NCBI RefSeq assembly: GCF_964204865.1
Contig: NC_135262.1
Coordinates: forward strand, 5,146,001 to 5,210,000
Length of the DNA: 64,000 bases
Source of the DNA: Styela clava
Taxonomy: Eukaryota
Direction of reading: 5' to 3'
Position numbers and translations under genes: made by a program. The notes beneath the pieces are model-generated. The model saw only the letters and a program-made list of their open reading frames with translations. It made no database searches and was not told the DNA's origin. Below are positions 15,401 to 62,000 of the stretch, piece after piece; position 1 is the first letter of the stretch; every line of letters begins with the position of its first letter.

Positions 15401-18400
15401 GAAGTGATCTGACGAGCAAACTAGAACCTGCGTTTCTTGCTGGACTACGATGCAAACAACCAGCTATTCGACAAAAATTTGTAGAAGTTTTTGATCGCAG
15501 CATCAAACAGAAACTTTATGATCGTTTGTTGTACATTATTTGCTCTCAAAATTGGGAAGCAATGGGAAGTCATTTTTGGATAAAACAATGCATTGAGGTG
15601 ATAATTCAATTTGATATATTTTATCTACATCAACCGTATCATCAAACTTAAAACAACATTTGGTACTCCCTTAGTGTATGTACCAGGTTAGGGTTAGGCC
15701 ATCATTTTATTCCGGTTTTTCCTTTTTAGTTCTATTATGAGTTCTGAGACTGTCTGTGTTAGCCAAGTGAATATACCCCCTGGCAATAGGTTTCAGTCCC
15801 GTTACACAACATGTAAAATAGGCGAACAAAATGAGTTTCCTCCATATCGGTACATATGGAGGAAACTCCATACATACATTTCTGGAGTGCCCAACATTCC
15901 ATGTTCCAAACCTTAAAAATTAATTATTTATTTAGTATTAAGGTATAATTAGTAAATGCCGGCAACAATAATCTCGATAAAATGATTTTCATATATTCTA
16001 TAGAAATTTCCAGTAAGTATATCATTAAACTAAAGACATTATGTGTGCTGTTAATCTGAAAAATTATTATTAAATTGGTATGAATGAATAATTATTGAAT
16101 GCCCATAACTAAAGTTACTCCAATAACACACCAAAAGAACTGGACATCGAACAAAATATTGCACATAATCATTCCAACTTCACATTTGGTTGGTCATGAT
16201 CAGTCATCTGTAACTGCTGACATCATTGATCAATCTCAGGCATCTGGCAAAACACTAGTTGCCAGAAATACAATAAGAATACAAATAACAATAATACCCT
16301 GGTAGTATACTTTGTTCAGTGTGAATATATCCGCTTGTAATAAAGTATCAGTTTAAATCGAAGAGGAGTGCTTGTTCTTCCCATATCATTCCGACTCAGC
16401 TCATGTCATACATTATCAACTCCAAAGAACTCAACTATTCACAGAGAACACTCTGTCACATGAAAAAAAATTGGTTGTTATTTTCTTGTAACTACATTTG
16501 ATTTGATACCTCTGTTTTTTTCTCTTCAGCTTCTATTTGCTGTTTGTGATAAAGGAACCTCGATATTTAGTCGTGGAAGTCCTTACCTTCTACCTTCCAT
16601 CACAAATGTTGTGAATCTGGCTGATAGTCAAGAAAGACAAGTATTTGAGATGATGAGTCGTGTTAAGACTGAACCAATGGAAGTTGACATGGACAATAAA
16701 GATGATGTAAGCAAAATTAATGTGAAAATTATTTTAATGGTTTTTAGCCATGCTTATGTTTTATTTTCCTAATTATAAAACTTGAACACATTTCCATCGT
16801 ATTGCAAAACAATAACTCAATATTTATTAGCTCTCAGTTGGGGTTACCCAAGACTAACTACCATTGGAATTTCCATTGTTCTCTCACAATTTCCAATTTC
16901 ACTTCTCTCTATTTGAAAACAAACCCAACAATTGCTAATCATTATTTATGTGCATGCTATCGAGTTTCTTATCGTAATTGATAAATGCTTGTCTGAAGAA
17001 GTCTGACCCTGGTCATACGAAACGTTATAGAAATACATTTGTACCCCTGCCTATAGGATTTCAGCCCTTTTCACATCTTGATGTAAAGTAGGCGAACAAA
17101 ATTAGTTACATCCCTTTATTAAAATTAGTACACACACTTCTGGAGCGCCCCTGGGTGCACTGGTTTTGAACGCATGGGTATAAATTTGTAAACGGTTTGC
17201 CACCTTCATAAGCAGTTCATGTCCCATATCTGACATGGACTGGTAACCGGACCAGAGAAGTCGGGATTCAGTGTATGAATTTTCTATCTTAATAATTGTT
17301 TCCTCTTTAGAGATAAATGATAAAATCTTTCTCTATCTTTATTAAGAAATACTAAATTCATTGGTAATCGTAGTTTTTCATTTAATTTTTGTTTTGTTTA
17401 TTTTATTCAGGATGAATCTCAAATGATGGAGACTAATTCAATCAGTGGAAACACACGACTAAAAAGCCCTATCCAACATTCAAAGTCGAAGGATCCCAAG
17501 CAACTTTTGGCAACGCTAATAACAAAGTACATTTTATTTTTTTTCATTTATATCCCAATTTAGCCATACTCGGATCATAGATGTAAGACATAGGTAAGAG
17601 ATGTAATAAGAAACTGTGGTAATTTATATAATTTGTGTGCATAGTTTGGTATATCTGGTATATCTCATATCTGTTTACTGGCAACAGTAAATTATTAGCT
17701 GAGTCATAGTTGGCATGCTTTTATCTGAGTCATGTTTTGTTGGTGCTTGATAATTTTATTGTGTACTACTTCTAGGTGCTGCTAACGTTTAGGTTGATTA
17801 AAGCTTAGTATTTGTAGATAGATTTGTTTGTAAAGTAATAAACTAAACTTAGGTTAAGACAAAAACAATGTTTTTTAAATATCACGAGATATATTTCATT
17901 TATAAAGTATGTCTATAATATTTTCTATTCCAGACATGGGAGATTCTTGGAATCCGTGACAGAAGTAAAAATCTGTTCGTTCCTGAATTCAGTGACTCAA
18001 TTATGCCATCATGATACCGATCTTGCAAGCAAAGTTTGGATTCAACTTTTCCCAAGAATTTGGAAAGTTCTCAGCGACAAACAACAAGATGTAAACATTG
18101 TTTACTGTTTTTTCTTTTTTTAAACATTATATTCTTGTTCAATAGGAAAGTATCTTCTTTTTATTAGTTTTAATTTCCCACATTACAGTATATTTTTCAA
18201 CTCTGCATCTATTTTAAAACTAGGGCACGAATCGGAAAGCTTTTACAAGATATTTTTTAATTTCTGCATTTGCTTTTATATTACCCTAGTTGCATCATAT
18301 CTGTTTTGAGAATTCAACCCACCCAATATCTTATTCAGATTTCCATTGCTCACACCTGAGACGTAGAGAACAAATTAAATCTAATTCTTGCCATCAAGAT

Positions 18401-35703: not shown

Positions 35704-35767
35704 ACAGTATGCGTTCTTGTTATTCTAACCTCTAAAATGCGATTCAATAGTCTTGATGCGCACTAAC

Positions 35768-36035
35768 TATTTCTGTAACGTTTCCTCTGACAAATTGAAC
35801 AGTAATGCACTTGAACTAAGTATGTCTGAGGAAGTATGGCCTTGGTCAGACGAAACATTACAGAAATATATATATATAATAAATGTATTTGTGTTAGTGT
35901 GCTGCAAGACTCTTGAATTACTTGGGATAGTTATCTTCACTCTTACTACAGCATACTTATATGGATCCACCGGCACAAAAGCATAGAAGAAGGAAAAGTA
36001 GTTATTCTCGTAAAAATCCAATCGATAGCCTAACA
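35768..36035 (+). mobile_element. Hammerhead-bearing Penelope-like repeat with a short inverted 5' piece
   Basis: Core CTGAGGA-A-GTATGGCC/GGTCAGAC-GAAAC-ATT at 35826-35859 plus ~170 nt of family tail. 35768-35791 is the reverse complement (22/24) of 35845-35868. Confidence 0.6.
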
Positions 36036-43950: not shown

Positions 43951-44093
43951 TCGACGATTCCATCAAAAAATTACACTCCAGTTGGTTGACTCAATATTGT
44001 CACCACGAAACTGGTTTTATAAAACTTCGAAAGTTGAGCTACTCAAATCTCGATAAAAATAATCAACAAAACTTGCAAACTTAAAACGCCAGC

Positions 44094-47000
44094 ATGGCGC
44101 CTATTAGCGCTGCCATTTTGGCAGTGTTTATTTTCCTCAGCGCGTCTCCAACGAGGTCAGTATTATTATTTTTTCAATTGAATATTGTTATGTTGGAACC
44201 GCGTTATTGCTCTTTTTTTGTCATTATTGTGAACTGCTCGTCTGAGGAAGTCTGATTTTGGTCAGACGAAACGTTACAGAAATACATTTGTGTTAGTGTG
44301 CAGCAGGACTATTGAATTGCATAGTATGGCATTGTCTTATACCTGCATTTATATTTCAATTTTATTATTGTAATTGATATTGGATGCAATTTTATCAGGA
44401 TTACCATGAAAAATCGACAATTCACAATTTCATTAATTTTTTTGCCCTACCAATATTTTCCGATTGCAAAGTTTTATTTATTTTTAATAATTTAAAGCAT
44501 ATTAGGGCATTGGAAATGTCTCGTTCTACACACTGGTATTGTGACGTCACGTTGTTATTTTTATGAGGTCATATTCTGTTTTTATTTAATGCTCGCTCCT
44601 ACATCCTATAGAATCCACTGCATATATGTTTGCGAATAACAGTGTTAATAACACGCTATCATCAAAATAAAATCAGAAGTTATATATTTGTATAAAACTA
44701 ATGTTTTTGCTCGGCTATGTCACGTACAGCGTATTTTAACTAATTCAATTCAGTAACTTATTCATTCAATCGCACCTTGGATTATTACAAAAGTTCAAGT
44801 TTTATGGAAATTATTAAAACCTAGTTTTATATTCATTTTATTAACTATTTTTCTTTTTTTTTTCTACAGCGTTGAGGCACTTCTTGGTAAGAATTTTAAT
44901 TTTATTTTCATATAAATCAAAGGAAATGATTTTTATTCGTATATTGCACAGTATTTTCGAAGAAGTATCACCAAAACATTGATTATTTTTATGAATCTGT
45001 ACAAAAATACGTTCTTTATTTTAATTTAGATATAAGTTGAATTTAATATTTCCAGTCATTGTTAAACAAATTTTTAGATTTAGGCTCGGATTTCATTTTC
45101 ATTTTACTTGTTTGTTAAATGATAACAATGAGCCATGAAATTTAGTTGTCGTCCAGTGTTATTATAGTAGTAATTAATTTGTTTATTGTATTTTTTGTTA
45201 ATTTCATCTTTCCTTATTTATTTTCCGCTATTCATCACTTTTCAGAATGCCAAAACCTGAACGACCCCCTTAACGGAAAATTCTCTTGTACCAAAGAAGG
45301 AGACAATTGGTGAGTTAAAAATACTGATATACTAATTCAAATAAAAACTTTGTAAATGAATTTACAAAATTTAAAAGAAAAAAATGAAGATACAAAATAA
45401 AATGTCCAAATTGGGTTATGGAATACACACAAAAGTGAAACCAAATTTAAGTAATCACTAAATGAAAACATATAGCAGTGTAAAGCACACGATCCAATAA
45501 TTTCAATATTTTCTAAATTGATAGATTAAGGTTTCAGTGGCTCCCTCCCTACTTTTGTATTTCAAACTTATTTTGAAACCGTTATGCAAAAGTCTGTCTT
45601 CCGCTTTTGTACAATTTATATATTTTATAATGTGATTATAAATAAGTATTATAATAAAAACAAACAACTAAAGAATATTAGTATTTCTACAGCAAATACA
45701 AAGCTGACTTACTCCCCAGGAACGATAAAATTTTTGCATGGGTAGGAGATTTCTCTCTGGTTGGGAAACGTTCATAAACATTCGATGTTTTTTTATGCAG
45801 GATCTGTGTTGCAACATGTGACGCAGGTTTCAAATTCTCTAATCCGAAATTTGGCCAAGAGATCCGTTCCGTTTGTGACCCCGCTGATGGTGTATGGGAT
45901 CCTCCGTGCGAAGCTATTTTGTGCGAGAAAGAGGGTATGGATTCTATACCGTTTACAATGACTTATAGATTAGATTGATATTTTGCTTTAAGCGATAGAA
46001 TTTTGGGAAGTCAAATAACGATGCAATGTTCAAAAAACCGTTTTGAAATGGTGGATAAAGATGAGACTTTATGAATATTAAAAAAACAAAAAGCAGATTA
46101 CATTGTACTCTGATTTAAGAAAACGTTTCCCATCAAAACGCTCTTACAGCAGTATTTTAATTGATTTTTTTAGGCTTTATAAACTTTTTTGATTAGTCCC
46201 CTTAATCCTCATTGCACCTTAGAACCTTGCACCTTGATTAGAGCTATACTTGTTTAGTTTCATGCCTTGTGCCAATGTGTGGTCTTGGCATATTGAACTA
46301 GACTGCGTCGCTTCGTGCTTTCCTGGTCGTATTGACTTGAACTTGTTCAAGTCTCCCGTCAATCGACATTTACTGGTCCCTAATTTTATACTATTTGATT
46401 CAAGAGTCTTTTCGCACACTAACACAAATGTATTTCTGTAGCAGGACTCTTGACTCAACTAGTATAGTCAAGTTTATTCTTGGCACAGCATCGTTGCGTT
46501 ACATACGGATCCACTTATTCAAAGGCATAGAGCAAGGAAGAGTAGTTAGTCTTGCGTAACCCCAACTGATAGTTCCATAATTTTATATTGTTATTCCCTT
46601 ATAGTTTCAGTAGCTCTGGGTAATAGCCCGCCCAGAAGTCAGTTGTGTATCTAAATGATTGACGTTTCTTTGAGAGAATTTCCTTTCAAATATTACTTTC
46701 TGCAAACTTTTATTCATTGTAATACCATATATTCTAGAAATCAATCCCTGTGATGCATCGGCACCAGAAGATGGCAAAAAAGAATGTAGCGACGTTAACG
46801 GGAGTCGAATGTGTTCGATTCAGTGTAACGACGGTTTCCGAGTCGAATCAACGCACCTTTACGTGTGTAATTTAGGCTCTGGAGACTGGGTTCCTGAGCT
46901 TTCGGATAAATCAACATTTCCGAGCTGCTTAAAAGGAGCTACATCGTAAGTCTCAGTCAAGTTCATTTTCATATAGCCAAGCATGATTTCTAATCATTTC

Positions 47001-50000
47001 AGAAAAATGTTGGAGGCTCGCGGGCCATAACCCGGCCCTTGTCAACACTTAAACATTTTTCTCATCAAGCATCAAATTCTAATCCGACCCCGTCGAGCTT
47101 GTAAAACCCTGGTATTAAAATAAAGAATTTTTAAAATATATTTCTTTGTATTGGAATTAGTCAAAATTTGGAAAATTTTAAATATTCAAAAAAAAATAAA
47201 AATAAGATGTAGCATCAGAACCGTTCTTATTATGGTCACAAATCATGGCGTAGTGAGAATAAAATACGTTACTTTACAAATTAAGCAACTTTAGGTAGTA
47301 AATTTTTCCATTATAAGCTTTGTTTATTAGTCTAGGTTCTTTGATGAGTGAAATTATTTGATTGTTACACTTTTTGTTACACTATATATTTTACCCTGAA
47401 AAATTCAGATCATGCAATTTAATGTAAAACTTTGCACAACGAATGAAAATAGACCGACAAGTACCAAATTTATTTACCCACAATTTCAGGAATTTGTTCC
47501 ATAAATTTCAAACAATAAAAAATTTACGTTTTATTTTATTCCCAATCAAAAGATGTGTCAATCTTCAAGTCGACGCTGAAAATCTAGTGATGGTGTGCCG
47601 TACGGAAGAAAGGGAACAGCGATGCTATCCCGAATGCCACGCTGGCTTTCAGGCCACTGGTGATCTTCCAGAAAAAGGCTACTATGCCTGCTTGAACGGA
47701 GAGTGGTTTCCTAAACTCGAAACAATTGAGTGCAAAGGTAAGCATTGGAAAGATACAAAACACTGAGATGCAACGAAATCGCAGACTTAATTTGTCTCTA
47801 AATGCTAAGATGTTTGCATTGAAATCGATATCTCTTAAAGTAAGTTTTAACTATTTAATTTTCATTTCGTTTTTCTGAAATCTTTTGTCGCACTCAGAAC
47901 CACGGGTTGTTCAATTTTGATTTTAATATTTGACAATGAATCGTTATTCCTGTTTCTAGGAGCTATCGACCCTCAAGATCCAACAGGTATTGCTCACATT
48001 ACTGGTATATACACGCAGAAAGATGTCCCTGTAGAACAAACTGGCTATTGTACCACTTGGGGACAACAGCACTACAGAACATTTGACGGAAAAGTTTACC
48101 GATTCCACGGCAAAACCGATTTCATTCTGGCGAAAGACAAGCTTGGCGACTTTACAGTTCTCATACACAACGATAAGGACTGCAGTGGTATCGACTGCAA
48201 AAGGTAGAATAAGTTATAGATATAATATTACATTGTCAATGCTATGACAAATTGACTGACTTACACAAATAATGAAAGCTCAACTTTTCATCCAAACAGC
48301 TGTGGAATTCAGTTATTGCAAATCCAAAACAAAAAGCAAGTCACACTAATAATAAAACTTATCCCATGTGCCTTGTACACCACGGTAATACCATGGATTT
48401 TTTTTTTTTTTTAAATAAATAAAAGCATTCTAATAGCCTTCTAGCGACAACAACAATCTTTAATCACTGACAATTTCAAAACAACTGTCAAGTAATTAAA
48501 AAGTAAGCGATAATAAATAATAGAAAAAAAAAAAACGATAATAAAAGCAAGAATTCTAACAACAACACCGTAATACAACCATTTCGTGTCCAAAAATTGC
48601 ACCGCTATGCCCAGCTGTTTGCCAGGGTCTCACGTAGATCATTCATTCAAAGTTTGTTTTCCTTATTCACAATATCAAGGACCCCATCAATTTATTTGAA
48701 ACAAGTTATCCACAATCACAACAATTTTCTTCTGAACCAGATCAGCGACGGTGAAAATCGGTTCCATTATGATTGAAATGAAAGAAGACACAAAACTTTG
48801 TGAACCAGCAGCTTTCCATGACGGAGAGAAGCTTTCTCTTCCAACTTCTATTCATGGTGTTGTCGTCCAAAGAATCGCCGACTATATCGTAGTCCGAGAT
48901 AGAATTTCAGATCTTTATGTCAAATGGGATGGGAAGGAATCCGTTTCAATCAGAGTAAATATATATTTTATTTCAGTCTTTCTGCGTCATCGCGTTAGAA
49001 AATACAATTTTTTTTCAAATCGAGAGAGATATTTTATTTTGTCTACCAGAAACAAGCAACGGCACAAATATACATACATAATAATTAGTTGATTCGGTAT
49101 AGACTAAGGGGATCGATACGACCTGAAAGGTCTATAATGAAGCTTTGTCATTTAGTACTTTAAATTTGTTTCGCTCTAATCACCGTTAATAACATGGGAA
49201 TTTTTTTTATAAAATATATGGCTTTTTACTGATTTCAACTATTTAATTTTAACTTTCGAGTTTCCGACTATATCTCCTACAGCACGAATAAATGATAGAA
49301 GTGACGTTGGTTACGACATATTATGGTGCATAATTGAGTGAAATTACCGCCTTATAAAAAGTATAATATTCTATGGTGAAATAGTTTAACTTCTGTAATT
49401 TAATCAGGTCAACAAAGAAATGTTGGGATCCACTTCCGGTCTCTGCGGTTTTTACAACGAAGACCACACAGACGATTTCAAACTTCCGGACGGTACAGTT
49501 GTAAAAACAGTCGATAAATTTGCAAAAGGATGGCTCACAAATTGTAAGTGGAGATATTTTATTTCACTTTTACTTTAACGTATAACACGTATAAAAGCAA
49601 TCTTCAGTGTATCGTAGAAGTCTATAAATCCCCAGTCGCGAGTGTTCCAGAAGCGTGTTTACCAAAATGGAGTTAACTCATTTTGTTCGCCTGCTTTACA
49701 TCAAGTTGTGTAAAGGGACTGAAATCTATGGCCAGGGCGTATATTCACTAACACAGACAGTCCCCGAACTCGTAATTGAAATAAAATTATACCCTAACCC
49801 TAACCTGGTACACACACTACGAGAGTACCCAGTCGCGAGCCAAATGGAGTCAATGGTCATCCGAGTCTTGTGCAGAGTGCGAATCCGAGTCGAAAACTAA
49901 GTTAAGTCTCACTGGTGGTTAGTTGATGACAATTCCGAATCCGTTAGATGACTCGATCCACAAGATGGCGAGAGTCCAAATTGAGTCAAGTTAATGAACC

Positions 50001-59000: not shown

Positions 59001-62000
59001 TTACGGAAAATCGAAATAAAATTATGGCCTAACCCTAACCTGGTACACACACTACGGGAGTACCAATTTTTCATTGACGTTCGACCATTATAACATAAAA
59101 CTCATATAAAACTGAAATGAAACAAATGCTAGATGTTTACTCGGTGACGTGATTGTATTTGAAATGTATGATCATCTTATTGCTCGCTTACATTAACATA
59201 TAATATATTTTTCCTCGGATTTTGCTTCTAATATATGCCGAGAGAGGAAGGAAAACTAAAAAGCCTTTAAAATCGATCATAGCCACATAGCTGCGTTAAA
59301 AATATTATAAATTTTTTGTTTATGGTTTATAAAAATTCACAAATCATAATTTTCTCTGCTCTTTATTGGTATTTAATATAGGAAATGAAAGAAGAACGTA
59401 CTTATTTTTATCTTGCCATTAATTTCCATTAATCAAAGTTTGATACTAAATTATTCTTGTTATTCAGCGTTTGCGAAGGAGGTATGTGGTCATGTTCACA
59501 AGATCCCTGTCCAGGTCACTGCTCCGTTTATGGAGATTCTCACTTGTCAACTTTCGATGGACGAAAATATGATTTCCAGGTAATCTTTAAATAATGAAAT
59601 CAATTAGCCACAGCAAAAGACCTAAAAACAGTAATCGAGTGAGAAAAGTATTGCTTTTAAATCCCGAATGCGGGTTATTATTTGTGTTCTTTTTTTTTTC
59701 TTCAAATTTCGAGTAGAAAAGTAGTATGGCATTGATTACCGTGTTGTCATCTTAACAAGGTGTTTTTAGTAAGTTTCGTTTCATTTTCAAACAGGGAATT
59801 AGCAAATACGTGTATGCACAAAGCACGGATAAAAGTCAAAAGAAATTCCGCGTTGAAATGGAAAACGTAAAATGCGGAACCACAGGAGTTGCTTGCTCGA
59901 AATCAATAAAATTTGTCATAGACGACACCAAAACTCTCAACCTAGTCCGTGGAATGGATGTCGTAGAGGTAATCCTTGCCATTCAATCAACAGTTTTTTT
60001 TAAATATTGAAATAGTACATAACAGGAACTACTTACATAAATATTATATATATAATATATTATATTCATAATAAATATAGGTTTAAAGCAACATTTGAAC
60101 AAACCGTAATTTGTGATTCAAGAGTCCTACTGCACACCAACGCAAATGTATTTCTGTCTAGAAATGGAAATGTAATTTCTGTCTACAGAAAACCATAATT
60201 TGTTTGAATATATTATTTCACATCAATCATTATTTTCAAAAACTCAACACCAGTCAATGAGTATATTTATATTAAAACGTTGTTTTTGCATGAATTTTCC
60301 TCCAAACAAGGCTCTTTACAAGAATCCACTGACATACAACGGGCCGCTGCAATTTTTAAAAAGACCGAAATATTTTGAGATCGGCATTGCGTACCCAATT
60401 TGTTCCATCCCGAATGAGGTGGTCGGCTTAACTCTTGAACCCGATATATTTACTCTGCGATGCCTGAATAGTTAAAACCAACCCTTTAACCACTTGGCCA
60501 TCGCCGGAGGTTAATTTTAAAAAATAACTTATGGCGGAGCAGTTTTAAAAAGTTTACGAAATTGTCACTGTTTTATAAATAGCAGTGTTGACGTCCCATC
60601 ATTGAGTTTTCTGATTTTACCTCTGGTTCAGTTGTTATTTAGTGCAATTTTTCTGATGCTTTTTAATGACACTTTGTTTGATCAATTTTACTATTTTAGA
60701 GTGCCGGATTTGAAATTACATATGTTGGTTTGTGGGTTTTTATCCGAACTGATATTGGAGTAACACTACAATGGGACAAGGGCACATCAGTTATGATCAG
60801 AGTTGAACCAGAACATTCTAAATATGTCGAAGGTCTCTGCGGTAATTTCAACGGAGACATGCTAGATGATAATATATTAAGAAATGGAATGAATACCGAA
60901 GATGCCAAAAGCTTCTTTGTATCATGGCAGTTGGTGAGTCTTGCATTTTGACCATAAGGCGCACTTTAAATCCCTTTTCTGTCAAAAATCTGTCGTTTGC
61001 CTGATCTATGAATTAAGTAGTGCCTCATTGCCTATACACTCAAATTCAGAACCAATACCGGTTGCGTTTATCCATGGACAAAATCCCAATTTTTGTAAAC
61101 TTGGTGTTGTTTTATGACTACGTTTAATTTCATCCCATCTGACAGGATGCTGCTATTGAACCTGGTGCGGCTGAAGATACGTATGATTTGGAGCGTATGA
61201 TGTCCGAAGTAAACGTTCACAAAGTCAGTTGGGCGAAGAAAAAGTGTAGCGTGATCACATCATCGACGTTTTCTTCTTGCCATGGAGTTGTTGAATCCCA
61301 GCCTTACTACGACGCTTGTGTCTTCGATGCTTGTGCTTGCGATATGGGAGGAGATTGCGAATGTCTCTGCACAGCTGTCACAGCCTACGCTCAAGAATGT
61401 AACAGAAAAGGAGTACATGTTTTTTGGAGAAAACAATACCTCTGTCGTACGTTTTTCTTTTTATGATGTTTCAGTTATTTTAATTTTTTATAAGTTGGTA
61501 TCTGACGTAGCCCACTCCAGCCTACAATCTACGTAAAATATATATGATTTGTCTTTGCTCTGAAAATCCATTATTTCTTTCATTTTTCATTCAAAAAGGA
61601 ATCGTTCACATTTTCCAGTAGCAAATTAAATAGCCTCAACTGAAAAAGGGCATCATATTACATGAGATCGGATTGCGGCATTTCTTACATTAAATTTTCA
61701 GTTATATTTTCATACGATTATTAAAAATCTACCTAGATACCGTGTAAACACGTTTTCTTTGTAACTCAATAAAATTTGAAGTCATTACAATAGCAGCTAA
61801 AAAATTTGCCTTATTCAAATATAGCTATACAGTGCAATGGTTGCCGAGAATATTCGCCATGTCTGCCAGCTTGTCAAAAAACTTGCAACAATTTTCAACA
61901 CTACGAACAAGTCAAAGCAGATTGTGATGAAGTTTGCGTGGAAGGTTGCTCTTGTCCGGACACCATGGTGTGTATCATTGCGTAGTACCAGATACCAATA

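What the first reader, a model, noticed from the sequence alone, without database searches (positions are those of the whole stretch)
44238..44325. Complete minimal hammerhead ribozyme core on the sense strand of intron 1 of the VWD gene
Seen: CUGAGGA-A-[GUCUGAUU uu GGUCAGAC]-GAAAC-GUU-ACAGA, with a fully paired stem II (two G-U pairs), about 90 nt downstream of the first splice donor. Established: CUGANGA/GAAA/NUH is the hammerhead catalytic core. Penelope-like elements carry minimal type I hammerheads whose stem III is a short palindrome and which cleave as dimers. Here AACGUU is such a palindrome. Inference: the nascent pre-mRNA could be cut after GUU (44275), probably only by pairing with a second family transcript, which would link expression of this gene to repeat-RNA abundance.
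Basis: partly seen in the sequence, partly recalled or inferred. Interest (0 to 1): 0.8.

Follow-up and report, generated by a model that had tools for sequence, protein, structure and literature searches.

The report
Penelope retroelement hammerhead fossil in intron
The hammerhead ribozyme motif is real, but it sits in a 150-base leftover of a very common Penelope-like retrotransposon that landed in the first intron of an expressed VWD gene, and nothing suggests it cuts that gene's RNA.

Summary
The motif is at 44242-44275 (+) as described. It is far beyond chance: 0 descriptor hits in 300 shuffles. A covariance model built from other copies scores it 73.6 bits, E 5e-15.

It is the minimal type-I hammerhead (min-HHR) of Penelope-like elements (PLEs), already described by Cervera and de la Pena in 2014, in cnidarians among others. 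The window copy is a ~150-165 nt fragment of a PLE terminal repeat (pLTR). It is 7-11% diverged from its best-matching relatives. The genome holds at least 866 exact copies of the motif. These include both pLTRs of intact-looking PLEs (940-977 aa, RT + GIY-YIG) and a young 588-nt protein-less tandem derivative.

Transcript contigs confirm the context: sense strand, intron 1 (44156-44869), 87 nt after the donor, in an expressed VWD/TIL/C8 gene. Exon 1 is joined normally to the downstream exons.

The regulatory idea has no support. This copy is solo, and helix I is down to 2 pairs. A T>C change favours a competing hairpin that buries the core. A trans dimer through ACGU is worth only -1.7 kcal/mol. 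Published PLE hammerheads are inactive as single motifs.

The scan had already met this family elsewhere in this genome (s1-814887, s1-815903). Verdict: ordinary TE fossil of a known ribozyme class.

The parts
44183..44346 (+). Fragment of a Penelope-like element terminal repeat (pLTR) / 588-nt non-autonomous unit. The core homology is 44197-44346.
   Evidence: 46 scored matches in the own genome (2153 first-look candidates), query positions 34/48-197 at 86-93% identity; aligns to the pLTRs of full-length PLEs F1-F3 and to the 588-nt unit.
44240..44241 (+). Helix I, 5' strand (positions 2.2 and 2.1). C44239 (2.3) is mismatched in this copy.
   Evidence: cmsearch marks the 2.3/1.3 pair as non-canonical.
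44242..44248 (+). Catalytic box C3 U4 G5 A6 G7 G8 A9.
   Evidence: U4, G5, A6, G8 and A9 are invariant in 19 aligned copies; position 3 is U in two rows and position 7 is free.
44249..44249 (+). Unpaired A between A9 and G10.1, a hallmark of PLE min-HHRs.
   Evidence: invariant column 20. PMC4209133 lists it as a consistent feature.
44250..44267 (+). Helix II: 7 bp (44250-44256 with 44261-44267) and loop UUUG (44257-44260).
   Evidence: 97% of cells paired, and 2 pairs carry changes on both sides.
44268..44270 (+). Core G12 A13 A14.
   Evidence: invariant.
44271..44274 (+). A15.1 C15.2 G16.2 U16.1: a palindrome that can form helix III only between two copies.
   Evidence: 15.2-16.2 is C-G in 16 copies and G-C in 3; the (ACGU)2 duplex is worth -1.7 kcal/mol.
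44275..44276 (+). Predicted scissile bond, after U17 (44275) and before A1.1 (44276).
   Evidence: Follows from hammerhead numbering applied. No cleavage data exist.
44276..44277 (+). Helix I, 3' strand (positions 1.1 and 1.2).
43990..44155 (+). Exon 1 of the VWD/TIL/C8 gene (5' UTR plus signal-peptide-like start from ATG 44096).
   Evidence: table 8: contigs of about 5.69 kb in four runs.
44156..44869 (+). Intron 1, which contains the hammerhead fragment.
   Evidence: joint 44155 to 45245 with 16 letters between. One search places those 16 letters at 44870-44885.
44870..44885 (+). 16-nt microexon (exon 2).
   Evidence: table 5c; unique exact match.

Best explanation
The motif is the minimal type-I hammerhead that Penelope-like retrotransposons carry in their terminal repeats. 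A PLE, or its protein-less 588-nt derivative, inserted into intron 1 of the VWD gene in the sense orientation. About 150-165 nt of the pLTR region survives, 7-11% diverged from its best-matching relatives. In the parent elements the ribozyme is thought to process element transcripts. It needs two copies, normally adjacent in the tandem or partial-tandem insertions, to build helix III from the ACGU palindrome, and probably also the element's own protein. The solo intronic copy is a passenger. It is transcribed as part of the intron and removed by splicing, and it is expected to be essentially inactive. Shown here: the motif, family membership, PLE association, gene context and normal splicing. 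Inferred: inactivity of this copy and the role of the ribozyme in the parent element.
For: Motif and significance. A family covariance model built without the window copy scores it 73.6 bits, E 4.6e-15. The same motif with near-identical flanks lies in both pLTRs of full-length PLEs: L050 and L051 (960 aa), L052 (940 aa) and L053 (977 aa). ORF pieces of a PLE copy hit RVT_1 (E 7.5e-6, 26.2 bits) and GIY-YIG (E 2.1e-4, 22.0 bits), both just below Pfam's curated cut-offs. Pairing is preserved across PLE families: helix II 97% paired with C-G to U-A and U-A to A-U/C-G swaps, and 15.2-16.2 switches between C-G and G-C. [quoted passage not shown] The window copy is a solo fragment, and the other PLE debris in the window is likewise decayed. 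Exon 1 is joined to the microexon and downstream exons in about 5.69-kb contigs from four runs. Folding: the hammerhead-compatible fold is -8.2 kcal/mol against an MFE misfold of -13.1 for this copy, whereas the gap is only 0.5 kcal/mol in the autonomous F1 element. Literature: single min-HHRs show no cleavage and dimers cleave weakly (PMC4209133). The Anolis PLE hammerhead cleaves only with the element's protein, and no RNA-seq ends were found at its site (PMC11167929).
Against: The catalytic core, helix II and the palindrome are all intact in this copy despite its overall divergence, so residual activity cannot be excluded. Family RNAs appear abundant in the probable RNA runs: summed contig depth is about 800-1100 over 44191-44387, against 33-95 for the gene. 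PLE ORFs look intact, so a partner RNA and an assisting protein may be present in cells. The available runs are contigs and cannot show RNA ends.
Confidence: 0.9

Rival explanations
1. The intronic hammerhead is active on the host pre-mRNA. By dimerising with abundant family transcripts, or with help from PLE protein, it cuts intron 1 after U44275 and lowers VWD mRNA output in proportion to PLE activity.
For: Intact core, helix II and ACGU palindrome on the sense strand. Family-derived contigs are abundant in the probable RNA runs. Intact-looking PLE ORFs exist in the genome. A PLE hammerhead can be protein-assisted (PMC11167929).
Against: Solo copy. The only other sense-strand copies in the window lie upstream of the gene and are damaged. 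The trans helix III is worth -1.7 kcal/mol. Helix I is reduced to 2 bp, and the T>C at 44239 strengthens a core-burying hairpin, leaving a 4.9 kcal/mol deficit. U17 is, from general hammerhead knowledge, a poorer cleavage nucleotide than C17. The mRNA is spliced normally from exon 1 onward. Single min-HHRs are inactive in vitro (PMC4209133). Genome-wide there is no excess of copies ending at the cut site.
Confidence: 0.04
2. The pLTR fragment has been co-opted for something other than cleavage, for example as an intronic promoter/enhancer piece or a splicing-regulatory structure near the donor.
For: Published reviews state that pLTRs carry promoters (PMC6765202). The fragment lies 40-190 nt from the first donor.
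Against: No contig starts or joints arise from the fragment, and the intron beside it has zero contig depth. The fragment is diverged, truncated on both sides, and one of several similar pieces of debris in the window.
Confidence: 0.03
3. The motif is a chance match to the short hammerhead consensus.
For: The conserved boxes are short, and the Rfam hammerhead models do not report it.
Against: 0 hits in 300 shuffles. 866 genomic matches against 6 control matches. Membership of a PLE family with covarying helices.
Confidence: 0.005

Closest known systems
Minimal hammerhead ribozymes (min-HHR) of metazoan Penelope-like elements (Cervera & de la Pena 2014, PMC4209133; dimer cleavage by Lunse, Weinberg & Breaker, cited in PMC6765202)
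   Same: Type I topology. CUGANGA / GAAA / UH boxes. Unpaired nucleotide between A9 and G10.1. G10.1-C11.1. Long helix II (7 bp). Short helix I. No helix III, with palindromic 15.1-16.1. Located in the pLTRs of RT+GIY-YIG elements. Mostly found as dispersed single motifs from truncated copies. Reported from cnidarians to vertebrates.
   Different: Nothing in kind. This copy has an even shorter helix I (2 contiguous pairs) and is a fragment inside a host intron.
Metazoan non-LTR retrozymes (Cervera & de la Pena 2020, PMC7229834; PLE origin proposed in bioRxiv 10.64898/2026.07.22.740005)
   Same: The young 588-nt relatives of the window copy are protein-less tandem units, each with a type-I hammerhead and pLTR-like sequence.
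   Different: Described retrozymes carry canonical hammerheads with loop-loop contacts and make circular RNAs. Here the hammerhead is the minimal form, circles were not examined, and the window copy is not tandem.
Conserved intronic hammerheads of amniotes (Rfam HH9/HH10; de la Pena & Garcia-Robles 2010, cited in PMC7229834)
   Same: A hammerhead on the sense strand of an intron of a protein-coding gene, proposed to act in mRNA biogenesis.
   Different: Those are canonical monomer-competent ribozymes conserved at orthologous sites. This one lacks helix III, gives no Rfam match even at E<=10, and is a recent TE fragment.
Poseidon PLE of Anolis carolinensis (PAc) hammerhead (PMC11167929)
   Same: A PLE hammerhead at the pLTR/ORF boundary. 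Insertions end in a defined 'tail' downstream of the ribozyme; here insertions end about 46-51 nt after the cut site.
   Different: In PAc the ORF starts inside the ribozyme. Here the ORF starts about 130 nt downstream. Protein dependence is untested here.

Membership tests
PLE minimal hammerhead (min-HHR) | Conserved core C3U4G5A6N7G8A9, G12A13A14, U16.1-H17 | tested here: met
   44242-44248, 44268-44270 and 44274-44275. U4-A6, G8, A9, G12-A14 and U16.1 are invariant in 19 copies; C3 is replaced by U in two rows.
PLE minimal hammerhead (min-HHR) | Unpaired nucleotide between A9 and G10.1, and a G10.1-C11.1 pair | tested here: met
   A44249 is unpaired, and G44250 pairs with C44267.
PLE minimal hammerhead (min-HHR) | Long helix II (6-8 bp) supported by covariation | tested here: met
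   7 bp in this copy. Across 19 copies 97% of cells are paired, with 2 pairs changed on both sides.
PLE minimal hammerhead (min-HHR) | No helix III hairpin; palindromic 15.1-16.1 allowing a dimeric helix III | tested here: met
   ACGU at 44271-44274. A divergent PLE family has AGCU.
PLE minimal hammerhead (min-HHR) | Short helix I of 4-5 bp | tested here: not met
   Family copies have 3 Watson-Crick pairs plus a G.U. The window copy has 2 pairs, then a C.A mismatch. This weakens the copy; it does not change its descent.
PLE minimal hammerhead (min-HHR) | Resides in the terminal repeats of an element encoding RT and a GIY-YIG endonuclease | tested here: met
   L050-L053 carry the motif in both pLTRs around 940-977 aa ORFs. 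RVT_1 and GIY-YIG give sub-threshold hits on pieces of a related copy. The window copy aligns to those pLTRs.
PLE minimal hammerhead (min-HHR) | Self-cleavage, as a dimer | not testable with these tools
   The runs found are contigs, which cannot show RNA ends. There are no bench data.
Rfam hammerhead families (Hammerhead_1, _3, _II, HH9, HH10) | Covariance-model score at or near the gathering threshold | tested here: not met
   No match at gathering score in the whole window, and no hammerhead match at E<=10 in 44150-44400. This is expected, because those models include a helix III.
Metazoan non-LTR retrozyme | Head-to-tail tandem units each carrying a hammerhead, and no ORF | tested here: not met
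   The window copy is a single fragment. Its young relatives do form 588-nt tandems.
Metazoan non-LTR retrozyme | Circular RNA product | not tested
   No back-joint was sought. Contigs from other copies only partly overlap the region.
Conserved intronic regulatory hammerhead (HH9 type) | Monomer-competent canonical fold, conserved at the orthologous intron | tested here: not met
   No helix III, no Rfam match, and it is part of a dispersed repeat. Orthologous conservation could not be tested, because no related eukaryotic genomes are on hand.

The most novel reading that the evidence does not exclude
A solo sense-strand PLE min-HHR in a first intron is cut in vivo when PLE RNA and/or PLE protein are abundant. 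Bursts of retroelement expression would then sever nascent transcripts of host genes that carry such fossils, here a secreted VWD/mucin-like protein.
Probability: 0.04. Interest if true: 0.65.

Novelty: new member of a known kind. Interest (0 to 1): 0.15.

Why it matters
As it stands this matters little. It is one more dispersed copy of a ribozyme class known since 2014 to litter metazoan genomes, including cnidarian ones. It is still useful for annotation. It shows that Rfam models miss this class entirely, while a small family-specific model recovers it cleanly. It also documents that this genome holds intact-looking PLEs and a young protein-less derivative carrying the same ribozyme. Only if intronic solo copies were shown to cleave host pre-mRNAs would it bear on the open question of what PLE hammerheads do in vivo.

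Tried and rejected
This reflects model design, not absence of the motif.

(2) I looked for a genomic footprint of in-vivo cleavage. Two short tail fragments in the window (60107-60157 and 46387-46440, minus strand) begin exactly at the base after the cut site. Genome-wide, however, copies with two non-family bases before ACAG number 26. A control 4 nt downstream gives 34, and 1603 copies have T before ACAG. There is therefore no enrichment, and the idea was dropped as evidence.

(3) RNA evidence for cleavage: only contig-type runs were found, guessed to be RNA. They show exons and abundant family RNA but cannot show ends.

(4) Thermodynamic dimer folding: the cofold MFE is an extended duplex of the self-complementary helix II region, not a double hammerhead. 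This is uninformative about catalysis.

A smaller request served.

(6) The Lunse et al. dimer paper is not held in the library, so it is cited through a review.

Full report
**Observation.**
- The core is CTGAGGA (44242-44248), then an unpaired A (44249), helix II, GAAA (44268-44271), CGTT (44272-44275) and ACAGA.
- Helix II is GTCTGAT (44250-44256) paired with GTCAGAC (44261-44267), 7 bp with one U.G pair, closed by the loop TTTG.
- In hammerhead numbering the cut would fall after U17 (44275).
- Helix I is poor in this copy: U2.1-A1.1 and G2.2-C1.2, then a C2.3.A1.3 mismatch.

A min-HHR descriptor finds only this site in the window and none in 300 dinucleotide shuffles. The genome has 866 matches to CTGANGA-N14-26-GAAACGTTAC, against 6 for the reversed control.

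cmscan gives no hit at gathering thresholds in the window. It gives no hammerhead hit even at E<=10 on 44150-44400. I then built a covariance model from 18 other copies of this genome, leaving the window copy out.
- It scores the site at 73.6 bits, E 4.6e-15, the best hit in the window.
- It also finds damaged copies at 16981-17038 (+) and 35814-35871 (+).
- It finds a deleted copy at 35765-35801 (-).

**What it belongs to.**
- The motif lies in a repeat (about 44183/44197-44346) with 2153 first-look candidates in the 377-Mb assembly.
- The youngest relatives are near-identical 588-nt units without an ORF. They are arranged head-to-tail, often as head-to-head inverted arrays. An example is L031.
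- Their 3' ends fall within a few bases of ...CTCTTGAATTG(CATATTA), and their 5' ends vary.
- The same motif, with almost the same flanks, lies in both terminal repeats of full-length elements with single ORFs of 960, 940 and 977 aa (L050-L053).
- Pieces of such an ORF hit RVT_1 (E 7.5e-6) and GIY-YIG (E 2.1e-4), both just below Pfam's curated cut-offs. At least 152 loci encode relatives of the endonuclease region.
- This is the architecture of Penelope-like elements. The window copy aligns to those pLTRs at 89-92% identity and matches its best-scoring relatives at 89-93% over most of its length. It is therefore an older fragment.

**Is the ribozyme structure maintained in the family?** I aligned 19 copies from several PLE families.
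- Core positions U4-A6, G8, A9, G12-A14 and U16.1, and the extra A after A9, are invariant. C3 is replaced by U in two rows.
- Helix II is paired in 97% of cells, with C-G to U-A and U-A to A-U/C-G exchanges.
- The 15.2-16.2 pair switches between C-G and G-C, which keeps the palindrome.
- Only the first 3-4 pairs of helix I are supported.
- A PLE family with about 50% amino-acid identity in the endonuclease region carries GUUAGA/UCUAAC and AGCU in place of GUCUGAC/GUCAGAC and ACGU.

[quoted passage not shown] Most such motifs are dispersed single copies from truncated PLEs, reported from cnidarians to vertebrates. In a coral, thousands of such minimal motifs were reported (PMC7229834).

**Gene context.** Four runs, guessed to be RNA, hold a spliced contig of about 5.69 kb.
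- The exons are 43990-44155, a 16-nt microexon at 44870-44885, about 45246-45308, 45801-45933, 46737-46945, 47553-47735, 47958-48201, 48739-48954 and 49408 onward.
- Downstream open frames, scanned one exon at a time, hit VWD, TIL and C8.
- The motif is therefore on the sense strand of intron 1, 87 nt after the donor, as claimed.
- Exon 1 is joined to the following exons, so splicing across this intron proceeds.
- The high summed depth over 44191-44387 comes from contigs of other family copies (95-99% alike). The intron beside the fragment has no coverage.

**Would this copy cut?** Four points argue against it, and the runs cannot decide the matter.
- It is solo. The other sense copies in the window lie 8 and 27 kb upstream of the gene and are damaged.
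- A dimeric helix III made of (ACGU)2 is worth only -1.7 kcal/mol. Pairing with a free transcript in trans is therefore weak without tethering or protein.
- The subfamily change T>C at 44239 removes a helix I pair. It also strengthens a competing hairpin, CGUCUGA with UCAGACG, which buries C3-A6. The hammerhead-compatible fold is 4.9 kcal/mol above the MFE for this copy, against 0.5 for the autonomous F1 element.
- In the literature a single min-HHR shows no cleavage and dimers cleave poorly (PMC4209133). The Anolis PLE hammerhead cleaves only with the element's protein, and no RNA-seq ends were seen at its site (PMC11167929).
- The runs available here are contigs and cannot show ends, so in-vivo cleavage is untested.

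**A side test.** Two tail fragments in the window start exactly after the cut site. Genome-wide there is no excess of copies truncated there: 26, against 34 at a control position and 1603 intact. This gives no genomic evidence that cleavage defines element 5' ends.

**Verdict.** The proposed regulation of the VWD gene is unsupported and unlikely (about 4%). The finding is a new member of a known kind and of low interest. Other agents of this scan reached the same reading for the 587/588-nt family elsewhere in this genome (s1-814887, s1-815903). I re-derived it independently.

Noticed in passing
L031:486-3041 (G000 C1:6694285-6696840); also L002, L016, L025: Young protein-less derivative of the PLE: 588-nt units, each with the min-HHR, in head-to-tail runs of 2-3 units. 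These are arranged as head-to-head inverted arrays with arms 97.5-100% complementary. It resembles a retrozyme but carries the minimal hammerhead.
   Followed up: partly
L050:4385-8471, L051:1-5530, L052:1604-5235, L053:1656-5449: Intact-looking Penelope-like elements (ORFs of 960, 940 and 977 aa) with 99.6-99.8% identical terminal repeats. This suggests recent activity of at least three PLE families.
   Followed up: partly
L055:583-620, L057, L059 (3' regions of a divergent PLE family): A hammerhead variant with TTGAAGA (U at position 3 while position 8 stays G), helix II GUUAGA/UCUAAC and an AGCU palindrome. One relative (L058) keeps CTGAAGA.
   Followed up: partly
window 44870-44885: A 16-nt microexon of the VWD gene, seen as 16 letters between two joints in the contigs of all four runs and matching the window exactly once.
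   Followed up: yes
window 60107-60157 (-) and 46387-46440 (-): Short PLE tail fragments that begin exactly at the first base after the hammerhead cut site and end at the usual insertion tail. A genome-wide count showed no enrichment of such ends.
   Followed up: yes
window 16981-17038 (+) and 35814-35871 (+): Two more copies of the same hammerhead (71.9 and 68.5 bits), each with a broken helix II pair. The second also has the palindrome changed to ACAU. A deleted copy lies at 35765-35801 (-), forming an inverted junction.
   Followed up: partly
window 44239-44245 with 44262-44268: The 3' strand of helix II can instead pair with positions 2.3-A6 (CGUCUGA), which hides the catalytic box. The competing hairpin exists in the whole family and is strongest in the window's subfamily.
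   Followed up: partly
window 44191-44387, runs X1-X4: Contigs from other family copies pile up here to a summed depth of about 800-1100, against 33-95 for the gene's own contig. If the runs are RNA, PLE terminal-repeat RNA is abundant.
   Followed up: no
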